Both the position numbers and the translations under genes were made by a program. From positions 82,088,001 through 82,152,000 of the forward strand of contig CM097884.1 in the NCBI GenBank assembly GCA_044892505.1: DNA of 64,000 bases, in the 5' to 3' direction. The number at the start of each line of letters is the position of its first letter. Position 1 is the first letter of the stretch. This document shows positions 6,561 through 34,765 of the stretch, in pieces. The DNA comes from Schmidtea nova (lineage: Eukaryota). The notes below the pieces were generated by a model. It saw only the letters and a program-made list of their open reading frames with translations. It was not told the origin of the DNA and did not search any database.

Positions 6561-7144
6561 GGCGAACCCCTAAAACAGCGATTTCTAAAACATCGATACG
6601 AAAAAATAGATTTCTAAAACATTGACTGTCAAAATCATTGACTGTCAAAGACATCGACAACAATAACATCGAGAACTGATATACCCTAAAACATGACTGT
6701 CAAAAAAATATTGAATACTAGTTTTCCTCTAGTGAGCATTTGACTTACCACGGTAATTAAAATTAAGTTTTATGGAAAACAAAATTTTTCTTTTTCTTTT
6801 CCTTTTCTTATTAAAAAAGCATTGTCAAATATTATCAAAAACATTCATTAAATTAAACACTATTTAAAATAACTAATTATTAATTAATTAATATTCAAAT
6901 TAATATTGATTTAATAATTCTGCCAACCACATATTAAATTAAAACCTAACCTATTAATTAATTAATAACTAGTTATTTTAAATAGTGTTTTATTTAATAA
7001 ATGTTTTTGATAATATTTGATCATGTTTATTGTTTCTGAGACTCGATGTTAATGCTAGTCAATGTTTAGTTTTAAAAATTCGATTTTTTAGCAATCTATG
7101 TTTTAAAAGTCGATGTTTTAGTACTCGTACAAGGAGGGCGGCTG
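6561..7144. mobile_element. Foldback MULE-like non-autonomous element
   Basis: The 9-bp direct repeat AGTCCAAAT flanks it (6552-6560, 7145-7153). TAAAACATCGA motif arrays are inverted at the two ends, and a ~68-bp internal inverted repeat (6826-6893 / 6953-7021) surrounds AACCTAACCT. The terminal match is imperfect. Confidence 0.5.
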
Positions 7145-11950: not shown

Positions 11951-13251
11951 TATTCTATCCTTTGAAACCCCTTATGTGCAGCTCCTTCATGTGTAAATTA
12001 AAAATTTGTGCTCATTTAAAATTTGAACCCTCTAACCATATTGCGGAGCTAATAAGCCCTGCACATACGGAATTACCCTCACAACTTTCACCACAGAGGA
12101 CGCCCCTCTGCAGTTTAGAAAGTTTAAAAATAATGAATGAATGATTTTATAAAATTTTCATGGCAATAAAAACATGATAGCAACACAAAATCATACTACA
12201 TTCGACAAAGTAAAATTTACCTAAAGTAATCCGTGAAAGTCTATGATTCGATAAACTGACAAAGTCAAGATCGGTTAAATCGCTTGAGCTTTGAAACTAA
12301 TCGGTAATATTCTGATTCTTATGGTTTTGGACTTCAGTATTTATACTGATCTGGTTTGCTAATAGGGCCAATCAGAATCGTTCTACCGCTCAAATTAAGT
12401 TGGTTTTTTATTTATTTGGTAAAAATTTGATAGAGGTTTCAGATAGTGTCTTGTGGATCAACGTCTACTTAATGAATTAATAAAAAAAGTACTTTTATTT
12501 TACCTAATTATCTTAAATTTGTTTTAATCGATTCTAGATACTCTGTATCTCTTGGGTATTACTGCTACTTCTACATTAAATTCTTGAAATGATAATTTTT
12601 CTTTAATCATTTTTCACTATTATTATCTAATTAACAGCTTTAGCCGACTCTGTGAGGCTATTTTAGGGTATTTTTCTATTATTTAAAAATTAAAGAGACA
12701 AAGAAATATTTACTGTTAAAAGAGTCATAGAAAAATAAATCTAAGTCACGTTTTACAAAATTTAAATAGCATCTCTTGTTAACAAAACAGTTATATCGAA
12801 GGTATTTTGAATATTATTTTCATTTGATTGTGACATAATTTGTTTCATTTGGATTTCTGAATCTGGACAATCTTTGTGATTCCTCTGGAAATGAGTAATA
12901 ACAAATTCACCATTTTTTTCAATAAAATCTTTATGAATGTAGAATTCATTATTTTGGAATGCGTTATCAGCTGAAAAATGTAATTATTAAATTACGGAAC
13001 TCAGTTTAAACAGTAAATATATATTTATCAAGTAGCCAATCGGGAAACGGTGAATAAATATTTTGTTGAATTAGAAGTCAAGTATTGTCCGGCCGTAAAG
13101 ATGCACAATCCATACAATAAATGGCAGAGATAAAATGTGTAATAAATCCCTATTGTAGTGCTGAACATAGTGACGTATTATGAAATTAGGAGCCTCTGTG
13201 ATTAGAATTATAAGGAGCCTTACATTTTTTTCATATTTCTTATTTACAAAA

Positions 13252-13442
13252 AGTAGTAGGATGTGTCCCCGTCAGATCAGTTACCCCCCCCCCCCAAATT
13301 TTTTAAAGTTACATAACACCGGACACTTGACCATAACATCACTCGTCCGTGACCAGCACACTTGTGCAAAGACACACTTATGGCACGTGTTTCCAATGGC
13401 AACTACTACTTTTAGAATTTTTTGTATCATCCTCACGTGCCC
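13252..13442 (+). repeat. Left terminal inverted repeat (191 bp)
   Basis: It is the reverse complement of 27459-27648, with about 5 substitutions and a 12 C versus 11 G homopolymer difference. Confidence 0.9.
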
Positions 13443-13558
13443 GGCACGATTATTAACCATTGCATCATCCGCGCGTGCCCGCCATGATTATTGACCAGCA
13501 CACTTATGGGTAGTAACCGGCACACTTAGTGACCAACACACCATCAGGTAATCACTAC

Positions 13559-13682
13559 CCGCCAACCGCCAACCGCCAACAACCAACCGCCAACTGCCCA
13601 CCGCCGACCGCCGACCGCCGACCACCAACCGCCATCCTCCATCCGCCATCCGCCAACCGCCAACCGCCATCCGCCAACCGCC
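13559..13682 (+). repeat. (CCGCCAA)n heptamer tract, left
   Basis: Degenerate tandem CCGCCAA/CCGCCAT/CCGCCGA units. Confidence 0.9.
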
Positions 13683-14084
13683 CACTGCGCTCCGCTGCGC
13701 TCAACTGCGATCCATTAAACTTTCGAAAATCTATATTAGTATTATAATTATATAGTTTTCAAGTTATATAAATGCAAGATTTCTCATAAGGATTCAGATT
13801 CGTAATGCTTTCATGAAGTCCATAAAAGTTTAAAGATATAACATATATTTTTATTCTTAATTCATGCCATTATTTAGAAAATATGTAATCAACTATCTTA
13901 ATGGTAAAAAAATAATCCGGAATGGTCTTTATATAAAAATATACAAGTTTATACAATCTGTTTACTAACTACTTTATCAGTAGTATTTGATAATTTTATT
14001 TAAATTAATCAAATTTATTTTTTAATTAATTTATCTTTATTTCTATATTAGTCAATTATGGTCCGATTTTTATGAAAACTTGTA

Positions 14085-14545
14085 TACATATCAAATTCAA
14101 TATGCTGAATCCGAATTTGTTACAAAAAATAGGAAAAAAAATTAGTCCAAAGTGAGAGTTGAACCTGGGCCTCTCACATATAAAAAAATTTTAAATGATT
14201 TTTCTCGACTAATACTTGTCAGATTTGAACCAAAATTTCTATTTACATCAAATTCAATATGCTGAATCCGAATTTGTTAAAAAAAATAGGAAAAAAAATT
14301 AGTCCAAAGTGGGAGTTGAACCTGGGCCTCTCACATATAAAAAGATTTTAATTGATTTTCTCGACTAATACTTGTGAGATTTTAACCAAAATTTCTATTT
14401 ATATCAAATTCAATACGCTGAATCCGATTCCTTAACAAAATTTTCATAAAAACGGCCAAAGAAAAAATTATTCAACCTTGAGAGTTAAAACTGGGGTCTC
14501 ACAATTAGAAATCCATAGCCTTTCCAACTAAGCTACATTCCACAC
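14085..14545 (-). repeat. ~157-bp tandem repeat (about 3 units) headed by a degenerate tRNA-like sequence, left arm
   Basis: TCAAATTCAA recurs at 14091, 14248 and 14404. The minus strand reads TAGCTTAGTTGGAAAGGC (A-box/D-arm) and GGTTCAACTC (B-box/T-arm). Confidence 0.7.
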
Positions 14546-14599
14546 TTTTAATAAACAAAATTTTAGCATATATTTGATTTTTCTAATCTTTACATAGGT

Positions 14600-14601
<2 letters not shown>

Positions 14602-14667
<66 letters not shown>
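14602..14667. repeat. (AAT)22 microsatellite, mirrored as (ATT)22 at 26061-26126
   Basis: Read directly from the sequence. Confidence 0.95.
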
Positions 14668-14671
<4 letters not shown>

Positions 14672-14783
14672 TACACAAATAAAACTTGACACAAAATAAA
14701 AAAAAAAAGACATTTTCAAATAACAAAATTTATTTCAATAACAATTTTCATTCTGGAAATATCGACATTAAGAACTAGTCATC

Positions 14784-15154
14784 TCAGTCGTTCAATGTAT
14801 TGACTCCTAAATAATGCCCGAATGCAAAACTTTCATTTTTACCCACCCACTGACGCTTATCATCGTTGTTACTTAAAGCAATTTTAGTATTCTTAAAAGT
14901 ATACAATTGATGATTTTGCTTCCCAATTCGAGTTTGAGGAACAGAAAAGATTTGATTATTATTGTAGCAATCAAGATAAGAAAGATGTTTTATCTCAGTT
15001 CCTTCTAAATATACTCCCTTCGCTTTATTACTTTCAGATTCACCCAAAAGACTGTAGCACTTCGGACTTAAGAAAACCCATTCATTGGATCCAAGTCCAA
15101 ATTTGCCAATGACTGAGTCAGGATTTCTTGAATACAATGGATGTTCAGGAATAA
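14784..15154 (-). pseudogene. Protein-primed DNA polymerase B (pPolB) C-terminal fragment, left arm
   Basis: Translation EHPLYSRNPDSVIGKF...LSPKCYS...KAKGV...TKIALSNNDDKRQW...FGHY carries the Polinton pPolB C-terminal motifs KxY, KxKG and DDKR...GH. It is 5'-truncated, with only about the last 125 aa. Confidence 0.85.
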
Positions 15155-17263
15155 CCTATATAGTTTTAATAATAACAATAGTAATATTAATACTTGAAAC
15201 CAATCAAAATGAAACTTGACACATAAAAAAGTCAAATTTCTTTTTTAAAAAACTTGATTTACAAATTTTTTTTCCATTCTTCATCCATACCAGATTTGGT
15301 AAAACAATATGATATAAGTAACTGAATTTGTAGTGATTAGTTGACAACTAGTTAAAAAGTTTCAAAATCTATATATATTGCACAAAACCCTTATTAGCGC
15401 AATAATTAACAAGTTTTGAAGCTAAAGCATGAAAATCAATCCAAATTAGTTAAGTTATCAAAATATTTTAAATATTTCTGTTATTATATATTTATTATAG
15501 AAAAGACATGTTAGTTGATATCAGTTGATAATAGTTAAAAATTAACTAATAATACGTGGTAATCATTATTTTTACAAGTTCTCAATGAAAGTAGTAAACA
15601 ATGATTTAATTATAATTGTAAAAATACTAAGAGAAATTCCTAAGAAAAGTGACTCTCAAAAGTAATTTAAATATCATCTTCAAAAATTTATTAACAAAAA
15701 TTTAGTTTCAAAACTTTTACTCACAAAAATTTAGTTTCAAAAATTTATTCACAGAATTTAGATTCAAAAAATTATTCACAAATTTTAGTTTTAAATTTAT
15801 CCACAGTATTTAGATTAAAATCTATTTTTTACCCAGTTTTTGTTCACTAACCAGTTAGTAACCCATTAATTATTGATAAAATATATACTAATTTGATTTA
15901 TATTTAAAGTTAATTTCGTAATATTTTAAATTAATATATATCATTTGAATACAATTTTAAAAATTACTTTGACTTAAATTAACTTTTGAAACTTAGAATA
16001 AATTTTAGTAAACAAATCTAAATTTTTTCAATTAAAATTGATTTTTTTTCCAAATTGAATTTTGTCGGGAAAATATAGTTAGTTACACAATCAATTTTAT
16101 ACTAATTAATTAAAACTTATTTAAAATTGATGTCTTGAAGATTGGCTACATTAATGAGTTCCAAAATCATTTCAAAATGATACCAGGATATTTATGAATT
16201 TATTTGCAATTATTTATTTTACTAAAAGCAAAAATTATTATCATTTATTTGAAAATATGCGGATTTTTAAATTGAAACTTAAATAAAATTTTAATTGTTG
16301 GCTAATTAAAAGTAATTTTTATAGGTTTAAAATTAATCTAAAATTAAAATAATAATCGATTGATCAATGTACAAAATTTTATATTACTTAGTCAGCAACT
16401 TTAACAATTGAATAATCTTTTAAATAAATTAGACAACTGAATTTTTAAATAAGACGAAAAGAAAAAGAATAATAGAAATTTCTATATGCTTTAATTTCAA
16501 AATTGTAATGCTTAATTTTCAAATATTTTGGTTAATAAAGTATTTATTTTGAACCAAAACTAGTAGTTAGAATACTAAAGTTTACTTTATTATAACATTT
16601 AAAATGAAAAACAAATCAATTTACTCATTATCAATTAGTTACTAATTATTAATAAATTCGATAATAATTTAATACACGTTAAAATTAATTTAAATAGATC
16701 TTTTTAAGAATTGATTTCATTAGATTTCAAAAATTTTTAGAATAAATTTTAAAATATTTTTAATAAAAGAACTAAATGCAATAAACTCGATTGATTGACA
16801 ACCATTGACAACAAACTCATTTGTGCAATAAGATGTTTTGTCAGCGTATTTATTATCACTAGGTTATGAAACCATTAATGAATGCTGTTTTTATGTATTG
16901 ATTGAAGAAAACATGTAATAAAAACTAAAATCAACCAATTAAATTATCCAAATTCGCTCCAGTGTGTACATTATTTGTATAACATGTGGTATTTTTATAC
17001 TGATATTTTCCTATCGATTTGAATACAATTACTATACATTGCTACAAAAATCACTAAATTTCGGTATTAAACTGATATAACTCAAATTGAGGCTCCATTT
17101 TAAAATTACTTGCACCTTTTTAATTGATATTCATCATAAAACCTATTTAATTATCGATTTAACCGTTATAATGTATTATACCTCCATATTTCTTAGTATT
17201 CTCAAAAGTATAACACAATTTATCACGTAATTATATAAAATCAGTATTGATAAATTTTAAATA

Positions 17264-17760
17264 AAATAGCTACAAACTTCTTAGTTCAATAAAACTTACT
17301 CAAATATGTCGTTAACTTTGAAATAACTCTTAAGAAACCGCATAAAATCACCAAATTAAACGTGAAAATTTTATCAAATCTTATTACTCTTGATATTATT
17401 AATATCTTTACTAAATTATCACATGATCCATCATTGAAAATTACATTATTATTCTGCTAAATTAAAATACCAGTAAATTAATTAAATTGTTAATAAAAAT
17501 TGTTAATAACAAAACACAATTTATGAAATAGCTACAAACTTCTTAGTTCAATAAAACTTACTCAAATATGTCATTAATTCTGAAATAACACTTAAGAAAC
17601 TGCATAAAATCCCCAATTAAAACGTGAAAATTTTATCAAATCTTATTAATCTTGATATTATTAATATCTTTACTAAATTATCACATGATCCATCATTGAA
17701 AATTACATTATTATTCTGGTATATATTAAAAAATCATTAAATTAATTGTTAATAAAAAGC
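17264..17760. repeat. ~262-bp tandem duplication inside the arm (mirrored at about 22969-23465)
   Basis: AAATAGCTACAAACTTCTTAGTTC occurs at 17264 and 17526. The two units are diverged from each other but are the same in both arms. Confidence 0.85.
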
Positions 17761-19380
17761 TATGTAGTCATATATATTTTAAAATCCCATAAAAATGACC
17801 AAATATCATTCAAATCATGACAAAAAGCTATTTTGTCATATATAATTTAAAATCACATTAAAATCACAACAAATCATCCAAAACTCAATATTCAAGTCAT
17901 TATAACTGATACTGACTATGCTTAGTGGCTTTGAGTTTCAAATTTTACCATAAAGTAATCAATAAATAATCCTAAAATTTGATATAATCTGAATTAAAAG
18001 TTTCGACCATTTAATTAACAAAGAATATTGAATTAACACAAAATTATTTACGTTAAGACATTTCAAATTATCAACATTACTTGATATAAATCCTTAACTT
18101 CATTGAATTTCCATAAAATCAATTAATTACATAAATCACCTGTTAAAATTTATTTTACATCTAAATTCTTTCAATTATCTTCATAAATTTTCCACAATTC
18201 ACTTAAAAATTGTAATGAAATTACTTTGGAAGTTATTTGAATTTTTATTAGTTTGCTATAAAATTATTATAATCACTGTAATAATCGAAAATATTTATAA
18301 TCACTGTAATAATCTAAATTTTAGTCATAACCTTTGATTAAATTGACATTAATTTCAATCTTAAATATATTTTAAATTTAATGAAATCAATAATTTGCAT
18401 AAAATATTAATTGAGAGAAAATAAGTTGGAAATTTTAAAAAGAAATTTGAAATACAATCAATGTGTATTTCTAAAATATTAATTATCTTTGAATTTAATT
18501 AGAATAAATTGTATTTAATTTTAGCAAATATTTAGTTTATTTCGAAAAAAGTATTTGAATTATTGCCAAATAAAAAGTCATGGTAACTAAATATAATTAT
18601 AATATTATGATTTTAATTTAGAATTAATTAATTTGCATGATGATTTCTGAATTTAATTTTAATGTAGAATTAAATACTGGTCATTTATATTTTGTGAAGA
18701 AATTCCTATTACTAATTTTAAAAAATCAAAGTTATTTTAAAAAGTTTCAAATAATACACATTAAAATCTATATAAATAGTATATAAGTGAATATACAATA
18801 TGAATCTTTTACAGGTAAAAACCATCACAAAAGAGGTTCTGCTACCAAAGGTTCTGTTAGAAAGGTTCTGATACTAAGGATATATTAGAAAAGTTCTGAT
18901 ACTGAATATAATTGTTAATAATGAATTTTACCAAAATATTTATTGATTTTTCATTTTAAATATTTTCAGTGAATTATTAATATTAATAATTTTTATTATT
19001 ACCACGTAATAATTTTGTAACATTAAATCTGTTTCGATTGTTTTTTATGATATTTATAAAAGTTGATATAATATGAAAAATTTATTCACAAAGGGCAGTT
19101 TATGTATGTGATGCAGTTATCTGTTTGTGTATAGTAACTTTTCATTGAATTGTGTCAGTTTTTATCATAATTCGATGCATTACATTATTTTTTGATATAA
19201 TCTGTCTATTAAAAGATTTTGCATAAATAATTAATTATCATATTAAAATAAAGTGTGTATCTGCACACAAAAATATCAATAAATAAAAATTAATAAAAAT
19301 GTTAAACGAAATCTGATTGGTCAATTTAAATTATGAAAACATATATATAAATTGATTAAAAATTACAGATTTCATTAAAA

Positions 19381-19921
19381 ATGTATCAACTTAAAAGTAA
19401 GTTTAAATAATTTTAAATGATTATTTTTAATATTTTATTCTAGAATCTTCGAACAAAAAGATGTTGAAACAAGAAGTAATGAAAATTATTCTTGAAGAAA
19501 ATTCTATTTCGGCATCAAATTTGGTTAGGAATCCTGCAGTTCAATTTCTACAATACTCGATGGAATATTTAAAATTTCCAATAATTTATTCATTTAAAGT
19601 ATATATTTATTTAATTAAAATAAATTTCTAATAATTATTTTATAGGAACCTGTTACATTGAAACAATGCATGTATAATCTTCAAGTGGGGAAAATTGGAG
19701 ATATTGATAGACGAAATATTTCAGAAATTTTGTTAGCAATCAACAAAGAAATACAATTTAATGAAGCTTTTACGTATATGAATTGCATTAAAGATTGTAA
19801 TTTGAAAAATCCCGATGAAAATTCAATATATTAAATTAAGATAATGATTCAAGGCTTCAAAGAATCTAATGATGTTGTCAAACCTGTTTGGAAAATTATA
19901 GAAACAAATATATGTGAATAA
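19381..19921 (+). CDS. Spliced orphan gene (3 exons): 119 aa, or 148 aa if the in-frame TAA is a lesion; left arm
   Basis: Exons 19381-19396, 19444-19598 and 19646-19834 are joined in frame by two 47-nt GT-AG introns. The product is MYQLKKSSNKKMLKQEVMKIILEENS...NPDENSIY*. The frame stays open for 28 more codons to a TAA overlapping AATAAA at 19919-19921. Confidence 0.65.
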
Positions 19922-20751
19922 AATTTATTTATCAAATCTTATCTTTTCATTTCATTTTATTTTATTTTATTTTATTGTTTGTTTTGGTTAATTTAAATTT
20001 TTAATAAAAATTATTTTTTGTGTTAAATTTATTACCAAATATTTAAAATCGATTAATTTTTTATTAAAATAAAAATAATTAATTTTTTATTTTATTTTAT
20101 TTTTTGTTTTGGTTAATTTAAATTTTTAATAACAATTATTTTTTGTTTTAAATTTATTACCAAATATTTAAAATCGATTAGTTTTTTATTAAATAAAAAT
20201 AATTAATTTTATTATCATAATTAATCTAAATTGATTTTGTTTTAATAATTGATTATACGTTTAAAATTAAAATTCAAATTAATTTTCTTTAATATTTCCC
20301 GGCAACAATAATTAATTCGGAATTTGATATATATTCGAATATATATCAAATTCCGAATTAATTATTGTTGCCGGGAAATATTAAAGAAAATTAATTTGAA
20401 TTTTAATTTTAAACGTATAATCAATTATTAAAACAAAATCAATTTAGATTAATTATGATAATAAAATTAATTATTTTTATTTAATAAAAAACTAATCGAT
20501 TTTAAATATTTGGTAATAAATTTAAAACAAAAAATAATTGTTATTAAAAATTTAAATTAACCAAAACAAAAAATAAAATAAAATAAAAAATTAATTATTT
20601 TTATTTTAATAAAAAATTAATCGATTTTAAATATTTGGTAATAAATTTAACACAAAAAATAATTTTTATTAAAAATTTAAATTAACCAAAACAAACAATA
20701 AAATAAAATAAAATAAAATGAAATGAAAAGATAAGATTTGATAAATAAATT

Positions 20752-21292
20752 TTATTCACATATATTTGTTTCTATAATTTTCCAAACAGGTTTGACAACA
20801 TCATTAGATTCTTTGAAGCCTTGAATCATTATCTTAATTTAATATATTGAATTTTCATCGGGATTTTTCAAATTACAATCTTTAATGCAATTCATATACG
20901 TAAAAGCTTCATTAAATTGTATTTCTTTGTTGATTGCTAACAAAATTTCTGAAATATTTCGTCTATCAATATCTCCAATTTTCCCCACTTGAAGATTATA
21001 CATGCATTGTTTCAATGTAACAGGTTCCTATAAAATAATTATTAGAAATTTATTTTAATTAAATAAATATATACTTTAAATGAATAAATTATTGGAAATT
21101 TTAAATATTCCATCGAGTATTGTAGAAATTGAACTGCAGGATTCCTAACCAAATTTGATGCCGAAATAGAATTTTCTTCAAGAATAATTTTCATTACTTC
21201 TTGTTTCAACATCTTTTTGTTCGAAGATTCTAGAATAAAATATTAAAAATAATCATTTAAAATTATTTAAACTTACTTTTAAGTTGATACAT
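20752..21292 (-). CDS. Mirror copy of the spliced orphan gene, right arm
   Basis: It is the reverse complement of 19381-19921, with the ATG at 21290-21292. Confidence 0.65.
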
Positions 21293-24200
21293 TTTTAATG
21301 AAATCTGTAATTTTTAATCAATTTATATATATGTTTTCATAATTTAAATTGACCAATCAGATTTCGTTTAACATTTTTATTAATTTTTATTTATTGATAT
21401 TTTTGTGTGCAGATACACACTTTATTTTAATATGATAATTAATTATTTATGCAAAATATATGATAATTAATTATTTATGCAAAATATATGATAATTAATT
21501 ATTTATGCAAAATCTTTTAATAGACAGATTATATCAAAAAATAATGTAATGCATCGAATTATGATAAAAACTGACACAATTCAATGAAAAGTTACTATAC
21601 ACAAACAGATAACTGCATCACATACATAAACTGCCCTTTGTGAATAAATTTTTCATATTATATCAACTTTTATAAATATCATAAAAAACAATCGAAACAG
21701 ATTTAATGTTACAAAATTATTACGTGGTAATAATAAAAATTATTAATATTAATAATTCACTGAAAATATTTAAAATGAAAAATCAATAAATATTTTGGTA
21801 AAATTCATTATTAACAATTATATTCAGTATCAGAACTTTTCTAATATATCCTTAGTATCAGAACCTTTCTAACAGAACCTTTGGTAGCAGAACCTCTTTT
21901 GTGATGGTTTTTACCTGTAAAAGATTCATATTGTATATTCACTTATATACTATTTATATAGATTTTAATGTGTATTATTTGAAACTTTTTAAAATAACTT
22001 TGATTTTTTAAAATTAGTAATAGGAATTTCTTCACAAAATATAAATGACCAGTATTTAATTCTACATTAAAATTAAATTCAGAAATCATCATGCAAATTA
22101 ATTAATTCTAAATTAAAATCATAATATTATAATTATATTTAGTTACCATGACTTTTTATTTGGCAATAATTCAAATACTTTTTTCGAAATAAACTAAATA
22201 TTTGCTAAAATTAAATACAATTTATTCTAATTAAATTCAAAGATAATTAATATTTTAGAAATACACATTGATTGTATTTCAAATTTCTTTTTAAAATTTC
22301 CAACTTATTTTCTCTCAATTAATATTTTATGCAAATTATTGATTTCATTAAATTTAAAATATATTTAAGATTGAAATTAATGTCAATTTAATCAAAGGTT
22401 ATGACTAAAATTTAGATTATTACAGTGATTATAAATATTTTCGATTATTACAGTGATTATAATAATTTTATAGCAAACTAATAAAAATTCAAATAACTTC
22501 CAAAGTAATTTCATTACAATTTTTAAGTGAATTGTGGAAAATTTATGAAGATAATTGAAAGAATTTAGATGTAAAATAAATTTTAACAGGTGATTTATGT
22601 AATTAATTGATTTTATGGAAATTCAATGAAGTTAAGGATTTATATCAAGTAATGTTGATAATTTGAAATGTCTTAACGTAAATAATTTTGTGTTAATTCA
22701 ATATTCTTTGTTAATTAAATGGTCGAAACTTTTAATTCAGATTATATCAAATTTTAGGATTATTTATTGATTACTTTATGGTAAAATTTGAAACTCAAAG
22801 CCACTAAGCATAGTCAGTATCAGTTATAATGACTTGAATATTGAGTTTTGGATGATTTGTTGTGATTTTAATGTGATTTTAAATTATATATGACAAAATA
22901 GCTTTTTGTCATGATTTGAATGATATTTGGTCATTTTTATGGGATTTTAAAATATATATGACTACATAGCTTTTTATTAACAATTAATTTAATGATTTTT
23001 TAATATATACCAGAATAATAATGTAATTTTCAATGATGGATCATGTGATAATTTAGTAAAGATATTAATAATATCAAGATTAATAAGATTTGATAAAATT
23101 TTCACGTTTTAATTGGGGATTTTATGCAGTTTCTTAAGTGTTATTTCAGAATTAATGACATATTTGAGTAAGTTTTATTGAACTAAGAAGTTTGTAGCTA
23201 TTTCATAAATTGTGTTTTGTTATTAACAATTTTTATTAACAATTTAATTAATTTACTGGTATTTTAATTTAGCAGAATAATAATGTAATTTTCAATGATG
23301 GATCATGTGATAATTTAGTAAAGATATTAATAATATCAAGAGTAATAAGATTTGATAAAATTTTCACGTTTAATTTGGTGATTTTATGCGGTTTCTTAAG
23401 AGTTATTTCAAAGTTAACGACATATTTGAGTAAGTTTTATTGAACTAAGAAGTTTGTAGCTATTTTATTTAAAATTTATCAATACTGATTTTATATAATT
23501 ACGTGATAAATTGTGTTATACTTTTGAGAATACTAAGAAATATGGAGGTATAATACATTATAACGGTTAAATCGATAATTAAATAGGTTTTATGATGAAT
23601 ATCAATTAAAAAGGTGCAAGTAATTTTAAAATGGAGCCTCAATTTGAGTTATATCAGTTTAATACCGAAATTTAGTGATTTTTGTAGCAATGTATAGTAA
23701 TTGTATTCAAATCGATAGGAAAATATCAGTATAAAAATACCACATGTTATACAAATAATGTACACACTGGAGCGAATTTGGATAATTTAATTGGTTGATT
23801 TTAGTTTTTATTACATGTTTTCTTCAATCAATACATAAAAACAGCATTCATTAATGGTTTCATAACCTAGTGATAATAAATACGCTGACAAAACATCTTA
23901 TTGCACAAATGAGTTTGTTGTCAATGGTTGTCAATCAATCGAGTTTATTGCATTTAGTTCTTTTATTAAAAATATTTTAAAATTTATTCTAAAAATTTTT
24001 GAAATCTAATGAAATCAATTCTTAAAAAGATCTATTTAAATTAATTTTAACGTGTATTAAATTATTATCGAATTTATTAATAATTAGTAACTAATTGATA
24101 ATGAGTAAATTGATTTGTTTTTCATTTTAAATGTTATAATAAAGTAAACTTTAGTATTCTAACTACTAGTTTTGGTTCAAAATAAATACTTTATTAACCA

Positions 24201-25574
24201 AAATATTTGAAAATTAAGCATTACAATTTTGAAATTAAAGCATATAGAAATTTCTATTATTCTTTTTCTTTTCGTCTTATTTAAAAATTCAGTTGTCTAA
24301 TTTATTTAAAAGATTATTCAATTGTTAAAGTTGCTGACTAAGTAATATAAAATTTTGTACATTGATCAATCGATTATTATTTTAATTTTAGATTAATTTT
24401 AAACCTATAAAAATTACTTTTAATTAGCCAACAATTAAAATTTTATTTAAGTTTCAATTTAAAAATCCGCATATTTTCAAATAAATGATAATAATTTTTG
24501 CTTTTAGTAAAATAAATAATTGCAAATAAATTCATAAATATCCTGGTATCATTTTGAAATGATTTTGGAACTCATTAATGTAGCCAATCTTCAAGACATC
24601 AATTTTAAATAAGTTTTAATTAATTAGTATAAAATTGATTGTGTAACTAACTATATTTTCCCGACAAAATTCAATTTGGAAAAAAAATCAATTTTAATTG
24701 AAAAAATTTAGATTTGTTTACTAAAATTTATTCTAAGTTTCAAAAGTTAATTTAAGTCAAAGTAATTTTTAAAATTGTATTCAAATGATATATATTAATT
24801 TAAAATATTACGAAATTAACTTTAAATATAAATCAAATTAGTATATATTTTATCAATAATTAATGGGTTACTAACTGGTTAGTGAACAAAAACTGGGTAA
24901 AAAATAGATTTTAATCTAAATACTGTGGATAAATTTAAAACTAAAATTTGTGAATAATTTTTTGAATCTAAATTCTGTGAATAAATTTTTGAAACTAAAT
25001 TTTTGTGAGTAAAAGTTTTGAAACTAAATTTTTGTTAATAAATTTTTGAAGATGATATTTAAATTACTTTTGAGAGTCACTTTTCTTAGGAATTTCTCTT
25101 AGTATTTTTACAATTATAATTAAATCATTGTTTACTACTTTCATTGAGAACTTGTAAAAATAATGATTACCACGTATTATTAGTTAATTTTTAACTATTA
25201 TCAACTGATATCAACTAACATGTCTTTTCTATAATAAATATATAATAACAGAAATATTTAAAATATTTTGATAACTTAACTAATTTGGATTGATTTTCAT
25301 GCTTTAGCTTCAAAACTTGTTAATTATTGCGCTAATAAGGGTTTTGTGCAATATATATAGATTTTGAAACTTTTTAACTAGTTGTCAACTAATCACTACA
25401 AATTCAGTTACTTATATCATATTGTTTTACCAAATCTGGTATGGATGAAGAATGGAAAAAAAATTTGTAAATCAAGTTTTTTAAAAAAGAAATTTGACTT
25501 TTTTATGTGTCAAGTTTCATTTTGATTGGTTTCAAGTATTAATATTACTATTGTTATTATTAAAACTATATAGG

Positions 25575-25945
25575 TTATTCCTGAACATCCATTGTATTCA
25601 AGAAATCCTGACTCAGTCATTGGCAAATTTGGACTTGGATCCAATGAATGGGTTTTCTTAAGTCCGAAGTGCTACAGTCTTTTGGGTGAATCTGAAAGTA
25701 ATAAAGCGAAGGGAGTATATTTAGAAGGAACTGAGATAAAACATCTTTCTTATCTTGATTGCTACAATAATAATCAAATCTTTTCTGTTCCTCAAACTCA
25801 AATTGGGAAGCAAAATCATCAATTGTATACTTTTAAGAATACTAAAATTGCTTTAAGTAACAACGATGATAAGCGTCAGTGGGTGGGTAAAAATGAAAGT
25901 TTTGCATTCGGGCATTATTTAGGAGTCAATACATTGAACGACTGA
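25575..25945 (+). pseudogene. pPolB C-terminal fragment, right arm
   Basis: Mirror copy that differs by one codon (QTQIG versus QTRIG). Confidence 0.85.
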
Positions 25946-26056
25946 GATGACTAGTTCTTAATGTCGATATTTCCAGAATGAAAATTGTTATTGAAATAAA
26001 TTTTGTTATTTGAAAATGTCTTTTTTTTTTATTTTGTGTCAAGTTTTATTTGTGTA

Positions 26057-26128
<72 letters not shown>

Positions 26129-26182
26129 ACCTATGTAAAGATTAGAAAAATCAAATATATGCTAAAATTTTGTTTATTAAAA

Positions 26183-26643
26183 GTGTGGAATGTAGCTTAG
26201 TTGGAAAGGCTATGGATTTCTAATTGTGAGACCACAGTTTTAACTCTCAAGGTTGAATAATTTTTTCTTTGGCCGTTTTTATGAAAATTTTGTTAAGGAA
26301 TCGGATTCAGCGTATTGAATTTGATATAAATAGAAATTTTGGTTAAAATCTCACAAGTATTAGTCGAGAAAATCAATTAAAATTTTTTTATATGTGAGAG
26401 GCCCAGGTTCAACTCCCACTTTGGACTAATTTTTTTTCCTATTTTTTTTAACAAATTCGGATTCAGCATATTGAATTTGATGTAAATAGAAATTTTGGTT
26501 CAAATCTGACAAGTATTAGTCGAGAAAAATCATTTAAAATTTTTTTATATGTGAGAGGCCCAGGTTCAACTCTCACTTTGGACTAATTTTTTTTCCTATT
26601 TTTTGTAACAAATTCGGATTCAGCATATTGAATTTGATATGTA
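26183..26643 (+). repeat. Mirror copy of the tRNA-like / 157-bp repeat, right arm
   Basis: It is the reverse complement of 14085-14545 with about 2 substitutions. Confidence 0.7.
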
Positions 26644-27043
26644 TACAAGTTTTCATAAAAATCGGACCATAATTGACTAATATAGAAATAAAGATAAATT
26701 AATTAAAAAATAAATTTGATTAATTTAAATAAAATTATCAAATACTACTGATAAAGTAGTTAGTAAACAGATTGTATAAACTTGTATATTTTTATATAAA
26801 GACCATTCCGGATTATTTTTTTACCATTAAGATAGTTGATTACATATTTTCTAAATAATGGCATGAATTAAGAATAAAAATATATGTTATATCTTTAAAC
26901 TTTTATGGACTTCATGAAAGCATTACGAATCTGAATCCTTATGAGAAATCTTGCATTTATATAACTTGAAAACTATATAATTATAATACTAATATAGATT
27001 TTCGAAAGTTTAATGGATCGCAGTTGAGCGCAGCGGAGCGCAG

Positions 27044-27187
27044 TGGGCGGTTGGCGGATGGCGGTTGGCGGTTGGCGGTTGGCGGTTGGCGGTTGGCGGT
27101 TGGCGGTTGGCGGTTGGCGGATGGCGGTTGGCGGTTGGCGGTTGGCGGATGGCGGATGGCGGATGGAGGATGGCGGTTGGTGGTCGG
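27044..27187 (+). repeat. (GGCGGTT)n heptamer tract, right
   Basis: Tandem GGCGGTT/GGCGGAT units; the copy number differs from the left tract. Confidence 0.9.
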
Positions 27188-27458
27188 ATTTTTGGTCTGG
27201 TATTTTTGAATAGGATTTTTGGTCTGGTATTTTTGAATAGGATTTTTGGTCTGGTATTTTTGAATAGGATTTTTGGTCTGGTTATTTTGAATAGAGAATT
27301 TTGGGTCGATCTTTTGTATAGGAAATTTTTGTCGGTCTTTTTGTATAGGATTTTCTATTCCGAGATTTTTCTCGGCCAAAAAGGGACGCTGGTATTTTTG
27401 TACATGGAATTTTGGTCTGGTATTTTTGTATAGGATTTTGGTCTGGTTATTTTGAACA
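27188..27458 (+). repeat. Right-end-specific ~29-bp tandem repeat (GGATTTTTGGTCTGGTATTTTTGAATA..)
   Basis: Several near-identical copies are followed by degenerate ones. It has no counterpart in the left end, where 13443-13558 is a different sequence. Confidence 0.85.
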
Positions 27459-27648
27459 GGGCACGTGCGGATGATACAAAAAATTCTGAAAGTAGTAGTT
27501 GCCATTGGAAACACGTGCCATAAGTGTGTCTTTGCACAAGTTTGCTGGTCACGTACGAGTGATGTAATGGTCAAGTGTCCGGTGTTATGTAACTTTAAAA
27601 AATTTGGGGGGGGGGGTAACTGATCTGACGGGGACACATCCTACTACT
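27459..27648 (-). repeat. Right terminal inverted repeat (190 bp)
   Basis: It is the reverse complement of 13252-13442. Confidence 0.9.
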
Positions 27649-27818
27649 ACAAAAATAAAAAACGTGATTATTTTAAAAGAAAAATTTAATTCAAGAACCA
27701 AAACAAGTAATAATGTAATATAGATAAATAAATATAATAACATATAAAAAGAAAATAATCCGAAAAGAATAAACATAAAAAGAATAAATAAACACAGTTC
27801 TTTGACAGCATAAATTAA

Positions 27819-27915: not shown

Positions 27916-29870
27916 CACTCAATCCTTTTTTACGCGATTTTATTTTCGCCGAAAATTCAAAAATTTCGGTTCAGTTCTTTATATTTTATTTTACATCAAA
28001 CATTATACATTATGCAAACATTATACAAATTTCCGTATTTTGAAAAATATTTTTTCTGTGTTATGTATGTATACATACATATTCCTACTTTAGTTTTCTA
28101 GAAGATTTTAATGGTGTCAGATGCGCTTCTGTATGATATGTTATAATTCCAAAAGCATTATAAGTTAAAGTGTGTAGTTCGTCGTAGTGTATAATAATTT
28201 ATTATTTGCAAAACTGCTGTTTTTTAATTAATTATAATCAATTAATTTTAATCAATTGGAAAATCAAATTCTCTGAAAATTAAAATTATTTAAGTGGATG
28301 TTATAAAATTCATTTTTACAGTTTTTTTACCGAAATGGCCAGCAAATTAGGAACCAAGCGCAAGGGAATTTTACTAGAGCTAAAAATCAAAGTTTTAGAC
28401 GAGTGGTTCTCAAAGCGTGTTCCGCGGAACACTGGTGTTCTGGCGATCACTTTCAAGTATTCCGCGAAAAAATCAAATGTACAATTCAATTAAAAATTGT
28501 TCTCAAATAAAAATAAATTCAATATAAAATTTATACGTACCATTCGGCTTTGTATAATTACAAACATAATGGAGTGTTTTTGCGAACATTATTCAATTTT
28601 TTATTGCTCTTTTGATTTTAAAAAGGTTAACTACCCGCGCCCCCTGTTTTAAAGTTTATGTTGTATTGTAGATGTTCCGCCTAAAAATGTATCAGAGTTT
28701 AGTGTTCCCCGACTTCAAAAAGTTTGAGAACCACTGTTTTAGACAACCTAGAACAAGGTTTAGGTCCTACAAGAGTTGGTCAGAAACTTGGCCTCAGTAA
28801 ATCGACAGTGCGTACAATAAAGAAGAATGAAAATTCTATCAGGTAGTCCGTAATATTTGGTTAGAAAGTAACTGTATCAACATCGTTGTATTGTAGAAAT
28901 ACTAATGTAGAAAAAATGGAAAATCTCTTAGGAATAATTTAGCAATAATTGAGGATCTCAATCAAAAAAGGATCACTGTTTACACAGCAACGATTAAAAA
29001 AAGGCCATTCGTATTTAAAATCAAATTTTGCACCAAGAACTATCAACTTCGTCATCTGCAAAATAGAGAAAAATGAATTTTCGGCCAGCGGAGGGTGGTT
29101 TTCTAAATTCCTAAACTGGCAAAAATTGTAGAAGAAGGTAGTTACACACCCGACCAAGTATTCAACGCAGATGAAATCGGGCTTTTCCGGAAACGACTGT
29201 CAACTCGGATGTACGTATCTAAAACTCAGAAATCTATAGGTGGTTTAAGTAGCAAAAGAGCGTGTAACATTTTTACTATGTAGTAATGATTCCGAAGATC
29301 GAATGTTAATTCCTCTGCTCGTAAACAAAAACCTCAGGCTCAGAGCACTAAAATGAAAGGATTTAATGAAATTACCTGTTCATTGGGTTGCAAATAAAAA
29401 AGCGTGGGTAACTGCAGTTTTATTCCAATATTATTTCGAAAAATGTTTTGTACCAGGGATGAAGAGGTATCTGAATGAAAAGAAGCAGACCTTCAAGGTC
29501 TTATTAATTATTGATAATGCGCGTGGTCATCCAGTACTAAACCAACCCTATGTAAAGGTAATTTTCTCCCACCTAATACCACATCAATCAAACAACCATT
29601 GGACCAAGGAATTATATTGACATTAAAGTTGTACTTCTTGAAAAAACTTTTCAGTGCATTCTCGAAAAAATGGAGAATGACGATGAACGAGAATTCAGCA
29701 ATGCTTGGAAACAATTTTCTATTATGGATTGTATCACATACAAGACTTCAGCAATCGCAAAGTTGAGAAGGTCTACGTTAAACGCATGTTGGAATCCATT
29801 ATGGCCAGCTTGTGTCGTAACTGAAACAGCTGTGGTCATTTTATTCAAGCAAATAAACCCATTTTTTAAC
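27916..29870 (+). mobile_element. Tigger/pogo transposon relic
   Basis: Fragments are MASKLGTKRKGILLELKIKVLD|NLEQGLGPTRVGQKLGLSKSTVRTIKK (psq-type HTH), FSASGGWFSKF (CENP-B HTH), VFNADE and WVANKKAWVT...LLIIDNARGHP (DDE_1). It has many lesions and a putative left end TA|CACTCAATCC. Confidence 0.85.
28401..28736. mobile_element. Buster/Charlie-type hAT MITE inserted in the Tigger ORF
   Basis: TIRs are (G/C)AGTGGTTCTCAAA / TTTGAGAACCACTG, and the 8-bp TSD TTTTAGAC is perfect. Removing it restores the Tigger reading frame. Confidence 0.9.
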
Positions 29871-30145
29871 TCTTTCTTTTAACTTCCAATTTCTGTTTGT
29901 TTTCTTGTCAAACTTTGGATCGATTTTTAACCCACTTTCCGATATCCAATCGATCTGAAAATTTGCGAGCAGACAAATTATTCCATTGAAAAATTGAAAA
30001 ATTTTGAAAAATTTTGAAACAATGCGATTTTTTAATTTACTGTTGCCAAGAAACTACCAAACAATGTAACAACAATAAAATTAACCGAGAACATGAGAAA
30101 AAGAAAGAGTTACATTAAAAACTTGTTTTTATGGGTTCCTTTTTT
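29868..30145 (+). repeat. ~280-bp dispersed repeat, copy 1 (copy 2 at about 33425-33705)
   Basis: Near-identical sequence from TTAACTCTTTCTTTTAACTTCC to GGTTCCTTTTTT, with small indels between the copies. Confidence 0.85.
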
Positions 30146-31174
30146 TCGTATTTATCGCATATTAATCTAAAACTAAATTCGACCACTATGCTTACCTCCA
30201 TGTTTTCTAGGATTAAACTCTGTAATTTGGTTTAAATAAATAATGTAAACAGAGACTTTAAAAAATTTCAAATAATGTAAAAAATATCTAAATGTTTGTA
30301 AATGAATGAAACTTTGGTAAAATTTGAATGATGTCGAATGTAACTAGCTGACCTTTCAACTATTATTAAATTATTTTAAAATTTATTAAATAAAATATTT
30401 GTCCTTTGCGGTATTATTTTATCGATTATATTCATCAACTCAAAGAGCACATGAGTTCATTTGGTTAGACCAAAGTCTTTGTTTCCTTCATTCATTTTTA
30501 ATAACTATTATTGGATATTAAATTTGCATCATCTATAACTGCTAGAACTTATAAATATTTATAAATTTATTGAAACGCAAATCTATAAATATCTCGTTAT
30601 AATAGAAGACTGACATGTTCCACTTTTAAATAAATAACTAAATTTTAATAAACAATAATCGATGATTGTGCTCAGCAGATTTAATTCACTTATGCTTATT
30701 ATTCATATGGCCAGGGACTTTAAAGTAATAAATTTAAAAATATAAATTATTACACAAATTATTAAACTAAACATAAAAAATATAATATAACAATAAATAA
30801 TAATTATAATTATATCAACAATAAAGAGTTCAGTATATGAAAAATAAACTAACCAAAATTTATTAAATCTGAATCGCAGAGAAAGACAAAACAATCCTTG
30901 TTACCTGTAAATAAAAAATGTCATGTCACAAAATTTTATAACAGATTTTTTAACAATATATTATCAATTTTAATTAATAGGTGAATTAATCGATTTTAAT
31001 TTCACCTCTAGATATGTTGAACGGATAAATAATCATCTGAGACAAGAGTGATGTCAAACATGTGAACTTTCAAAGGTTGAAAATAAACATGTGATAAACG
31101 GTATTCAGTCGGTTAGACAATCAAGTACAGTGGTTCACACATATCATACACCGCGATTTGTAACATTATTACAT

Positions 31175-31538
31175 NNNNNNNNNNNNNNNNNNNNNNNNNN
31201 NNNNNNNNNNNNNNNNNNNNNNNNNNNNNNNNNNNNNNNNNNNNNNNNNNNNNNNNNNNNNNNNNNNNNNNNNNNNNNNNNNNNNNNNNNNNNNNNNNNN
31301 NNNNNNNNNNNNNNNNNNNNNNNNNNNNNNNNNNNNNNNNNNNNNNNNNNNNNNNNNNNNNNNNNNNNNNNNNNNNNNNNNNNNNNNNNNNNNNNNNNNN
31401 NNNNNNNNNNNNNNNNNNNNNNNNNNNNNNNNNNNNNNNNNNNNNNNNNNNNNNNNNNNNNNNNNNNNNNNNNNNNNNNNNNNNNNNNNNNNNNNNNNNN
31501 NNNNNNNNNNNNNNNNNNNNNNNNNNNNNNNNNNNNNN
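31175..31538. other. Assembly gap (N run); other gaps at about 35876-36004, 49763-49918 and 50039-50255
   Basis: Runs of n. Confidence 0.95.
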
Positions 31539-33096: not shown

Positions 33097-34765
33097 TTAA
33101 CTACCAATTTTAAAGTTTAGAAAAATAATAATATAAGTTTAGTTACAGTCACCATGACAGTTAAACAAAAATTCAAATTAATAAGTAAAATTTAATAAAA
33201 CAGATTTTAATATTTAAGGTAATATACCGTTTAAAAGGAAATACTAATCCAAGCTGGACAAATTATGCATTATTCGATAAAAAAAGTCGGCTATCAGCAA
33301 AACACTTGATTAATTGCGCAATAGCCTAATTACGTATATTATTAAAAAAGTAATAAATTGAAATTTAGGAATAGATATCTTAAAATCACATAAATACAAT
33401 TTAAAATCAAAATTGAATGTTATTTAACTCTTTCTTTTAACTTCCAATTTCTGTTTGTTTTCTTGTCAAACTTTGGATCGATTTTTAACCCACTTCCCGA
33501 CATCCAATCGATCTGAAAATTTGCGAGCAGACTCGTGGTAGCCCACAAATTATTCCATTGAAAAATTGAAAAATTTTGAAACAATGTGATTTTTCAATTT
33601 ACTGTTGCCAAGAAACTACCAAACAATGAAACAACAATAAAATTAACCGAGAACATGAGAAAAAGAAAGAGTTACATTAAAAACTTGTTTTTATAGGTTC
33701 CTTTTTTTGGTTATTTATTATAAATAAGTTATAATATATTTAACTATTTTACTGTGGAAATAATTTTCAAAAAGCGTGTATGTTTTCCAGTTTTGTCTTA
33801 ATTTGCTACATTACACTATTTTGACAAAATATAACTTTATTTTGATTGAACATTCATGGTTATATAGAAATTCATTCAAAGATAAGTTTACTCGGGATCC
33901 ACGGTAAAGGGATAAAATATCTATGTTTATTAAGCTCGTGATTTACATAGATTTGTTGCAGAAGTTTGTGCAATGTTCCTCGATGTTGACTAATTAATAG
34001 AAAACGTCAAAAATGTAATTTTTAAGTATCGTCGAGAATCCGAGTATTTCACTAGCTGTATAATTGAAAACATTGTATTGAAGAAACAAGCAATATTGTG
34101 AGAACTTTTTCATTAAATTCATCAGCAGTTATTTAAAACACATTCAAAAACTGACGTATATGGCCAACAATTTTCACTAAAAGTGAATAAGAAAGAATCC
34201 GCCGATGATTAAATATAAATAAATTTTTTATCATATGATGTATTTATTTGAAAATATAAATTCAAGTACATTCGGTTGTCAGAAGACATCACATGACACA
34301 CCCAGTAAGCAACATACGGGTATCAAAAGACATCATGTGACGTCTCCGGTCAATAATATGCTAACAACTCAACAACTATTGAAGCATCCTTCACTTTCGA
34401 ATGCTATTTTGATAATAAATAGAGAGAAGTGTTAATTGATTCAGTCAAAAGCATTAATAGTTACATCAAAGATAAATAATATCTAAAAGGTTTTTTTTCA
34501 AGGAAGAATTTAAGAAAACGATCAAGATTAAAGTAGAGTTTGAACAAATAAAAGCTGTGTTTAAGCTAAGAATGAAATTTTAGAAATGTCCAGCTTAAGT
34601 TGAATAATTTAAAATTGCGTTGCAAAAATCATTTCCAAATTTCAAAAATGTATTGAGTGATCAGGTGTGATTTTTCTTTTTTGAATCTGTAAAAACATGC
34701 TATTATTATGCGACAGTAACATTGCCTTTTGCATTTATATATGTAAGGAGTATATATTCTAACTA

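What the first reader, a model, noticed from the sequence alone, without database searches (positions are those of the whole stretch)
13252..27648. A 14.4-kb Polinton/Maverick derivative that is one giant spacerless palindrome
Seen in the sequence: AGTAGTAG/CTACTACT termini, a 6-bp TSD (ACAAAA), ~190-bp TIRs, and 13.6 kb of interior that folds back perfectly on itself at 20336/20337 with no loop. No integrase, capsid, protease or ATPase gene was recognised inside, only the last ~125 aa of pPolB in each arm. Established knowledge: Polintons have 6-bp TSDs, short tandem terminal motifs and protein-primed replication, and linear DNA viruses such as adenovirus and parvoviruses produce snap-back defective genomes. 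Inference: this is an integrated snap-back (defective-interfering-like) Polinton, a non-autonomous hairpin element mobilised in trans. I do not know of this class as a named family.
Basis: partly seen in the sequence, partly recalled or inferred. Interest (0 to 1): 0.92.

Follow-up and report, generated by a model that had tools for sequence, protein, structure and literature searches.

The report
Polinton remnant assembled as giant palindrome
A 14.4-kb gene-less remnant of a virus-like Polinton/Maverick transposon sits in this animal genome with genuine ends, but its perfect fold-back interior is much younger than those ends and may be an assembly artefact rather than a new kind of element.

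Summary
The observation largely holds. An element at 13252-27648 has AGTAGTAG/CTACTACT termini, a 6-bp ACAAAA target duplication, 190-bp TIRs and a spacerless symmetry centre at 20336|20337. [quoted passage not shown] It is therefore a non-autonomous Polinton/Maverick derivative.

The fold-back is not perfect throughout. The two ends differ by 3% in the TIR. They carry non-homologous subterminal blocks (116 vs 290 bp) and reshuffled 7-bp arrays. The inner 5.4 kb of each arm shows no substitution (outer 10/1438 vs inner 0/5407, p=1.6e-7). One 28-bp unit is present once on the left and three times on the right.

So the fold-back post-dates the divergence of the ends. This does not fit a simple history of snap-back genome, integration and decay. 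My estimates:
- about 45%: fold-back mis-join or collapsed centre in the assembly;
- about 30%: real post-insertion inverted duplication;

Raw reads would decide, and I had none. No independent copy of the locus was reachable.

The parts
13246..13251 (.). left copy of the 6-bp target-site duplication (ACAAAA)
   Evidence: chance of a match about 7e-4
13252..13442 (+). left terminal inverted repeat, starts AGTAGTAG; 45% GC
13443..13558 (+). left-specific subterminal block (116 bp; a 38-bp duplication and TIR-like pieces) with no counterpart in the right arm
13559..13682 (+). 7-bp (CCGCCAA-type) array, left copy; unit variants are ordered differently from the right copy
13683..14777 (+). AT-rich non-coding subterminal region (157-bp tandem repeat at 14088-14427, TAA microsatellite at 14601-14668); 99.7% identical to the right arm
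14778..15149 (-). pPolB remnant, left arm: last ~122 codons only. One break (5' truncation removing about 90% of the gene); no internal stop or frameshift in what is left
15150..20336 (+). inner left arm X: 19% GC, repeat-rich, non-coding (longest stop-free stretch 76 aa); no substitution against the right arm; one copy of a 28-bp unit at 19216-19243
20336..20337 (.). symmetry centre, no spacer, in the most AT-rich kilobase of the window
20337..25579 (-). inner right arm X', reverse complement of X; three perfect copies of the 28-bp unit at 21430-21513
25580..25951 (+). pPolB remnant, right arm: last ~122 codons only, one break (5' truncation); differs from the left copy by one residue
25952..27045 (-). 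AT-rich non-coding subterminal region, right copy (157-bp repeat at 26301-26640, TAT microsatellite at 26060-26127)
27046..27168 (-). 7-bp array, right copy
27169..27458 (-). right-specific subterminal block (290 bp, about ten 27-bp units) with no counterpart in the left arm
27459..27648 (-). right terminal inverted repeat, ends CTACTACT
27649..27654 (.). right copy of the 6-bp target-site duplication (ACAAAA)

Best explanation
The locus is a genuine insertion of a gene-less, non-autonomous Polinton/Maverick derivative. It was integrated by an rve-type integrase supplied from elsewhere; that step is inferred from the 6-bp duplication and the AG...CT ends. It keeps only the last ~122 codons of the protein-primed polymerase gene near each end.

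The two ends are old and distinct. About 1.7-1.9 kb at each end behave like a pair of long, diverged TIRs that reach into the polymerase remnant. The inner 5.4 kb of each arm are identical and meet without a spacer, so the fold-back arose long after the ends diverged.

I think the most likely source of that perfect centre is an error at the centre of the assembly. A fold-back (strand-joined) long read, or a collapsed middle, would let the left arm be read back on itself. It would then rejoin the right flank through the long-TIR homology. In that case the true sequence between the centre and the right TIR is missing from the assembly.

Shown: ends, TSD, TIRs, pPolB remnants, lack of genes, uneven spread of arm differences, spacerless centre.
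Inferred: integrase-mediated insertion, long TIRs in the parent, and the artefactual origin of the centre.
For: Ends and insertion. The symmetry stops at the termini, and there is no second such structure in the window.

Polinton origin: the 117-aa ORF hits 327 proteins. It always matches the extreme C-terminus of the 1100-1400-aa proteins among them. Full-length relatives carry PF03175 DNA_pol_B_2. tblastn with 24 long relatives finds only 14778-15149 and 25580-25951.

Gene-less.

Two ages: outer non-array sequence has 10 differences in 1438 bp and the inner has 0 in 5407 bp, Fisher p = 1.6e-7. From the subterminal rate alone, 17 differences were expected inside. The subterminal blocks are non-homologous.

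Artefact plausibility:
- The junction is spacerless and lies in the lowest-GC kilobase of the window.
- Fold-back reads make up 0.55-0.6% of ONT genomic reads, and fewer than half of flagged artefact reads (fold-back and chimeric together) have any sequence between their segments (PMC12870357).
- 40-50% of reads after whole-genome amplification contain palindromes (PMC6218980).
- Non-spaced inverted repeats are preferred nuclease and repair targets in cells, so a long perfect one should be short-lived (PMC3300023).
- Gene-bearing TIRs of about 2 kb exist in insect Polintons (10.1101/2025.02.07.637071).
Against: The two inner arms are not one sequence written twice: a 28-bp unit occurs once on the left and three times on the right. 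Under an artefact this needs heterozygosity or a consensus error.

The contig runs into unique sequence with a matching TSD on both sides.

A mis-join would need a fold-back read of about 13 kb or more, plus an imperfect overlap of at most ~1.9 kb.

PacBio HiFi data show virtually no fold-back reads, and the platform of this assembly is unknown.

No reads were available, so the artefact itself is untested.
Confidence: 0.45

Rival explanations
1. The palindrome is real and formed in the chromosome after insertion. The parent was a Polinton derivative with long (about 1.9 kb) diverged TIRs. It suffered an internal break. The right-hand end, resected into its TIR, invaded the left TIR in inverted orientation and copied the left arm inward to the break. 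Joining there produced a spacerless inverted duplication that replaced the original right interior. If transcribed, the locus would give a long hairpin RNA matching the TIR and the polymerase 3' end of related elements.
For: It explains the same two-age pattern, with old unlike ends and an identical interior. It explains why the innermost arm difference lies within the polymerase remnant. The 28-bp copy-number difference is a simple later contraction in one arm. The contig is continuous with unique flanks and a TSD. Mu killer in maize shows that an inverted duplication of a partial transposon gene plus TIR arises naturally and yields hairpin RNA (PMC3440606).
Against: Large non-spaced palindromes are breakage-prone. 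A perfect centre with zero substitutions in 10.8 kb therefore demands a very recent event caught in the sequenced individual. The blunt, loss-free join at the centre is a demanding step. There is no second example in the window, and no report was found in the literature searched.
Confidence: 0.3
2. A linear extrachromosomal copy replicating by protein priming switched strands and produced a snap-back molecule made of one end. This was integrated in trans. Since then the arms have been kept identical by arm-to-arm gene conversion, except near the ends, where the homology is interrupted.
For: The terminal tandem motif, TIRs and TSD fit a protein-primed element integrated by an rve integrase. Symmetry runs from the centre to within about 300-480 bp of each terminus. 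Snap-back defective genomes are a known class of highly symmetric, non-coding palindromic molecules (PMC13506859). A conversion gradient could give 3% in the isolated 190-bp TIR, 0.3% next to the heterology and 0% inside.
Against: Both ends should have started identical, but they carry unrelated subterminal blocks of 116 and 290 bp and rearranged 7-bp arrays. That needs several end-specific events, while 10.8 kb stayed untouched and the fragile spacerless centre survived for as long as it took the TIRs to diverge by 3%. The polymerase homology stops abruptly with 5.2 kb of unrelated AT-rich DNA beyond it, so the folded unit was already a deletion derivative. No other family member is known.
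Confidence: 0.15
3. The interior is a separate fold-back-type transposon, or a host palindrome, that landed in or was captured at the middle of a short two-TIR Polinton derivative.
For: The inner arm is compositionally distinct (19% GC) and unrelated to any Polinton gene tested. It is rich in internal tandem repeats.
Against: The symmetry runs without any break across the boundary between the polymerase remnant and the inner arm. An insertion would therefore have had to hit the exact centre and leave a palindromic or absent target duplication. No termini or TSD are visible there. Similarity between the ends and the inner arm is low-complexity only.
Confidence: 0.05

Closest known systems
Non-autonomous or partial Polinton/Maverick copies, e.g. 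pPolB-end remnants at the C. elegans eri-6/7 locus (10.1101/2024.01.15.575659)
   Same: TIR-bounded or TIR-associated remnants that keep only the polymerase end of the element, lack an integrase and are immobile on their own.
   Different: Those remnants are not whole-element inverted duplications. Here both arms carry the same polymerase 3' fragment in mirror orientation.
Insect Polintons with ~2-kb gene-bearing TIRs (Pieris/Euchloe; 10.1101/2025.02.07.637071)
   Same: Long TIRs that include coding sequence, so a gene or gene part is present twice in inverted orientation.
   Different: Those elements keep a unique, gene-dense interior. Here no unique interior is present in the assembly and no complete gene remains.
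Snap-back defective viral genomes (review PMC13506859; adenovirus examples are my own knowledge)
   Same: Highly symmetric palindromic molecule without coding capacity, built from one genome end, with no spacer or almost none.
   Different: Those are free replication products. This is a chromosomal insertion whose two ends are not copies of one end, and its arm differences are unevenly spread.
Fold-back artefacts of long-read libraries and palindromes from whole-genome amplification (PMC12870357, PMC6218980)
   Same: Forward and reverse strand of one stretch joined head to head, often with no sequence in between; near-perfect symmetry.
   Different: Artefacts are single molecules. Here the structure sits inside a contig with unique flanks, and one 56-bp length difference separates the arms.
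Mu killer of maize (PMC3440606)
   Same: Natural inverted duplication of a partial transposon gene together with two copies of the TIR region. It is proposed to give a hairpin RNA of about 4 kb that silences the family.
   Different: Different superfamily and kingdom. Transcription and small RNAs are untested here.
Foldback (FB) elements of Drosophila (own knowledge)
   Same: Elements consisting largely of long inverted repeats built from tandem repeats.
   Different: FB elements make 9-bp duplications and carry no polymerase remnant. Here the TSD is 6 bp with Polinton-type termini.

Membership tests
Polinton/Maverick | 6-bp target-site duplication | tested here: met
   ACAAAA on both sides; chance about 7e-4
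Polinton/Maverick | terminal inverted repeats with 5'-AG...CT-3' ends and a short tandem motif at the very terminus | tested here: met
   AGTAGTAG / CTACTACT; 191/190-bp TIR at 96.9%
Polinton/Maverick | [quoted passage not shown] | tested here: not met
   Only the last ~122 codons remain in each arm. This shows descent from a Polinton but not a working gene. Full-length relatives carry PF03175. No solved structure was matched by sequence.
Polinton/Maverick | retrovirus-like (rve) integrase gene | tested here: not met
   No ORF and no tblastn match to the rve-bearing gene of L002. Pfam gave nothing on the small ORFs.
Polinton/Maverick | capsid proteins, packaging ATPase, maturation protease | tested here: not met
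   No match to the genes of L002. The longest stop-free stretch in the inner arm is 76 aa. The test is limited to the few comparators in hand.
Snap-back defective genome, integrated | both arms are copies of one and the same genome end | tested here: not met
   Subterminal blocks of 116 and 290 bp are unrelated and the 7-bp arrays are rearranged.
Snap-back defective genome, integrated | complementarity over nearly the whole length with no spacer or almost none | tested here: met
   Centre at 20336|20337, no spacer; about 6.8 kb of each arm is paired.
Snap-back defective genome, integrated | arms of one age (even spread of differences) | tested here: not met
   10/1438 outer vs 0/5407 inner, p = 1.6e-7
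Snap-back defective genome, integrated | origin as a free replication product | not testable with these tools
   There is no access to extrachromosomal DNA data or to other copies of the family.
Assembly fold-back artefact | spacerless junction with identical arms next to it | tested here: met
   1121 bp on each side of the centre at 100%, and 5.4 kb per arm without substitution
Assembly fold-back artefact | junction supported only by symmetric chimeric reads; halved depth on the arms | not testable with these tools
   No reads are available. The exact ORFs of the locus are absent from the protein collection, so no independent assembly could be reached.
Hairpin-RNA locus of the Mu killer type | inverted duplication of part of a transposon gene together with its TIR | tested here: met
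   pPolB remnant plus TIR in both arms
Hairpin-RNA locus of the Mu killer type | transcription through the repeat and derived small RNAs | not testable with these tools
   No expression data are available.
Foldback (FB) elements | 9-bp target duplication | tested here: not met
   The TSD is 6 bp. The defining feature is recalled from my own knowledge.

The most novel reading that the evidence does not exclude
The palindrome is real and is the integrated product of a strand switch during linear, protein-primed replication of a Polinton derivative. Its arms have since been kept identical by arm-to-arm conversion. It would be the first natural footprint of a free, strand-displacing replicative stage of Polintons. 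It would also be a germline-tolerated spacerless palindrome of 14 kb that could feed hairpin RNA against relatives.
Probability: 0.15. Interest if true: 0.8.

Novelty: new member of a known kind. Interest (0 to 1): 0.35.

Why it matters
Protein-primed replication of Polintons is a model inferred from their genes and termini. An integrated snap-back product would be indirect natural evidence for a free linear replicative stage. A stable 14-kb spacerless palindrome in an animal germline would challenge what is known about palindrome fragility. A mirror-duplicated TIR plus polymerase fragment could also act as a hairpin-RNA source against active relatives, as Mu killer does in maize.

The present evidence shows only a real, gene-less Polinton remnant with long, diverged inverted ends. 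The spectacular part, the perfect centre, is the part that sequence alone cannot vouch for. It has the hallmarks of a known long-read artefact. Its practical value for now is as a flagged locus for assembly validation.

Tried and rejected
- Independent copies of the locus. Exact look-up of ten window ORFs found none in the collection. A homologue search with the 117-aa ORF gave no hit above 57% identity. No other assembly of this genome could be reached.
- Host identification. A search with the bromodomain exon returned only three unnamed fragments at 61-73% identity. The host stays 'an AT-rich animal genome'.
- Other copies of the element in the window: none.
- Other Polinton genes in the element. 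tblastn with 24 long pPolB relatives and with the genes of L001 and L002 found nothing beyond the two remnants. Pfam and PHROGs were silent on the ORFs.
- RNA genes: no Rfam family and no tRNA. This is despite a T-arm-like motif (my reading of the unit) in the 157-bp repeat.
- Named structural relative: a sequence search of solved structures with a 983-aa relative found nothing. I had the phage phi29 and adenovirus polymerases in mind.
- Relation between the ends and the inner arm: only low-complexity AT-rich matches at 60-72%.
- A fold-back transposon inserted at the centre: rejected, because the symmetry is seamless across the boundary.
- Literature on whole-element palindromic Polintons: none found. 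The Halocafeteria preprint concerns 52-nt terminal palindromes only.


Full report
OBSERVATION

The window is 64 kb of AT-rich sequence (about 27% GC). It has four N blocks, which I left untouched. It is animal-like: it holds a bromodomain/KIAA2026-helical exon and a zf-BED ORF.

- The sequence reads ACAAAA then AGTAGTAG... at 13246/13252, and ...CTACTACT then ACAAAA at 27648/27649.
- A 6-bp match at the local base composition has a chance of about 7e-4.
- The inverted symmetry starts exactly at these termini, and the flanks are not symmetric.
- No other long inverted repeat exists in the window, and no other copy of the element.

The symmetry centre lies between 20336 and 20337 with no spacer. 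A 200-nt stretch across it folds as one uninterrupted hairpin, z = -28.

ANATOMY OF THE ARMS

From outside to inside:
- a 191/190-bp TIR at 96.9% identity;
- a block with no homology between the arms: 116 bp on the left, built from a 38-bp duplication and TIR-like pieces, and 290 bp on the right, about ten 27-bp units;
- a GC-rich 7-bp array whose unit variants are ordered differently in the two arms;
- 1.1 kb of AT-rich non-coding sequence with a 157-bp tandem repeat and a trinucleotide run;
- the polymerase remnant;
- 5.2 kb of 19%-GC, repeat-rich, non-coding sequence up to the centre.

The left arm is 7085 bp and the right arm 7312 bp.

Between the arms, the 5.7-kb main block has 21 differences. 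Seventeen lie in the 7-bp array and the other four lie outside the inner arm, with the innermost inside the polymerase remnant. Beyond that there is no substitution for about 5.4 kb per arm. The one inner asymmetry is a 28-bp unit present once at 19216-19243 and three times, perfectly, at 21430-21513.

One search printed the coordinates of the arm-to-arm differences.

GENE CONTENT

The only sizeable ORF is 117 aa, at 14784-15137(-), mirrored at 25592-25945(+).
- A full-library HMMER search gave 327 hits. The match is always to the extreme C-terminus of the 1100-1400-aa proteins among them.
- Several of those proteins carry PF03175, the organellar/viral family B polymerase domain.
- tblastn with 24 long relatives finds only 14778-15149 and 25580-25951 in the whole window.

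Each arm therefore holds one polymerase remnant of about 122 codons. Each has a single break, a 5' truncation that removes roughly nine tenths of the gene. There is no internal stop or frameshift, and the two copies differ by one residue.

No integrase, ATPase, protease or capsid gene was found. This rests on tblastn with the genes of a related contig, on Pfam and PHROGs scans of the ORFs, and on ORF length: the longest stop-free stretch in the inner arm is 76 aa. Rfam and tRNA scans were empty.

The element is thus a Polinton/Maverick derivative that cannot replicate or integrate by itself.

THE KEY RESULT: TWO AGES

Outside the 7-bp array, the outer 1438 aligned bases carry 10 differences and the inner 5407 carry none (Fisher p = 1.6e-7). 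From the subterminal rate alone, 17 differences were expected inside (Poisson P = 3e-8). In addition, the two ends carry unrelated subterminal blocks.

A snap-back molecule copies one end, so its two ends start identical and its arms then age together. That is not what is seen. The outer 1.7-1.9 kb look like an old pair of long TIRs that reach into the polymerase 3' end. The interior duplication is much younger, or has been homogenised.

Gene-bearing TIRs of about 2 kb are documented in insect Polintons. Polymerase-end remnants are common in C. elegans.

WHAT MADE THE CENTRE

Three readings fit the two-age pattern.

(a) An assembly error at the centre (about 0.45).
- A fold-back long read would carry the left arm back on itself and rejoin the right flank through the long-TIR homology.
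- Such reads make up 0.55-0.6% of ONT genomic reads, and fewer than half of flagged artefact reads (fold-back and chimeric together) have any sequence between their segments. They are virtually absent from HiFi data.
- Whole-genome amplification gives palindromes in 40-50% of reads.
- The centre lies in the lowest-GC kilobase of the window.
- Non-spaced inverted repeats are preferred nuclease and repair targets. A perfect 14-kb one should therefore be short-lived in a germline.

(b) A real, recent, post-insertion event (about 0.30). After an internal break, the right end invaded the left TIR in inverted orientation, copied the left arm and was joined at the break.

This needs several extra end-specific rearrangements and long survival of the fragile centre.

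A fold-back transposon inserted at the centre gets about 0.05, because the symmetry is seamless across the boundary.

The 28-bp copy-number difference argues mildly against a pure artefact, as does the continuity into unique flanks. The zero divergence and the missing spacer argue mildly against long-standing reality. Reads would settle it, and none were available. The locus is not represented in the protein collection, so I could not reach an independent assembly.

RELATIVES AND A POSSIBLE SLIP

To place the remnant I looked up the contigs of four homologous proteins. This brought in L001-L004: metagenome or sequencing-run contigs of unknown host that carry Polinton-like genes.

I used the contigs only for gene bounds, identities and tblastn queries.

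They show that relatives have a full-length polymerase followed by other genes; L003 has a protease-like neighbour, and L002 has rve and an A32-like ATPase. The arms here are therefore deletion derivatives.

One unexplained coincidence remains. The point where the remnant's homology starts corresponds, within about ten codons, to an ORF boundary inside the polymerase of both L001 and L002.

COMPARISON AND NOVELTY

As a Polinton, the element meets the structural criteria (TSD, termini, TIRs) and fails all the gene criteria. It is a non-autonomous member.
- As an integrated snap-back genome, it fails two of three testable criteria.
- As a Mu killer-like hairpin locus, it meets the structural criterion only.
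- I found no description of a whole-element palindromic Polinton.

What is secure is a new member of a known kind. The palindromic form would be a new variant if reads confirm it.

Interest is 0.35 overall. The most novel surviving reading, an integrated replication snap-back, has a probability of about 0.15 and would deserve about 0.8.

Noticed in passing
window 13399-13413 (mirrored in the right TIR near 27489-27503): Inside each TIR, about 150 bp from the tip, lies the reverse complement of the terminal motif with its A-run (CTACTACTTTT versus the flank-plus-terminus AAAAGTAGTAG). It may be an internal copy of the terminal sequence or chance.
   Followed up: no
window 14778-15149; L001 1378-1931; L002 8758-10390: The point where the polymerase remnant's homology begins corresponds, within about ten codons of a full-length relative, to an ORF boundary inside the polymerase of two independent relatives. 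It could be a shared fragile or slippery spot, or coincidence.
   Followed up: partly
window 36860-37100 (-): Weak tblastn similarity (34 aa, 44%, E about 1e-5 in this small database) to a small gene next to the ATPase of the Polinton-like contig L002. It lies just after a masked block, and no ORF of 60 aa or more is there. It may be spurious.
   Followed up: partly
window 44101-45606 (+): A zf-BED ORF of 310 aa continues in the same frame for 190 aa after one in-frame stop. It looks like a decayed hAT/ZBED-type gene.
   Followed up: no
window 58534-59400 (-): A host exon with a bromodomain and a KIAA2026 helical domain. The nearest database proteins are only 61-73% identical fragments, so the host species is not represented.
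   Followed up: partly
window 29862-30149 and 33420-33711: Direct repeats of about 290 bp at 95-97% identity, 3.56 kb apart, enclose a masked N block (31175-31538). The arrangement resembles an LTR pair.
   Followed up: no
window 28402-28741 and 60904-61789: Two pieces of an interspersed repeat (163 and 176 bp, 95-96%) recur about 33 kb apart. The first lies only 750 bp from the element's right end.
   Followed up: no
window 42232-43031: 222-bp direct repeats at 99% flank a 15-bp-period GC-richer array that is open on both strands (ORFs of 167 and 132 aa). No Pfam match.
   Followed up: no
window 8415-10014 (-): Two adjacent ORFs (359 and 161 aa) in different frames with no Pfam or PHROG family. 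This may be one interrupted gene of unknown kind upstream of the element.
   Followed up: partly
window 39594-40001 and 51875-52537: Minisatellite arrays with periods of about 9 bp and about 33 bp.
   Followed up: no
window 6814-7031: An 80-nt inverted repeat (91%) with a 58-nt spacer, hairpin- or MITE-like.
   Followed up: no
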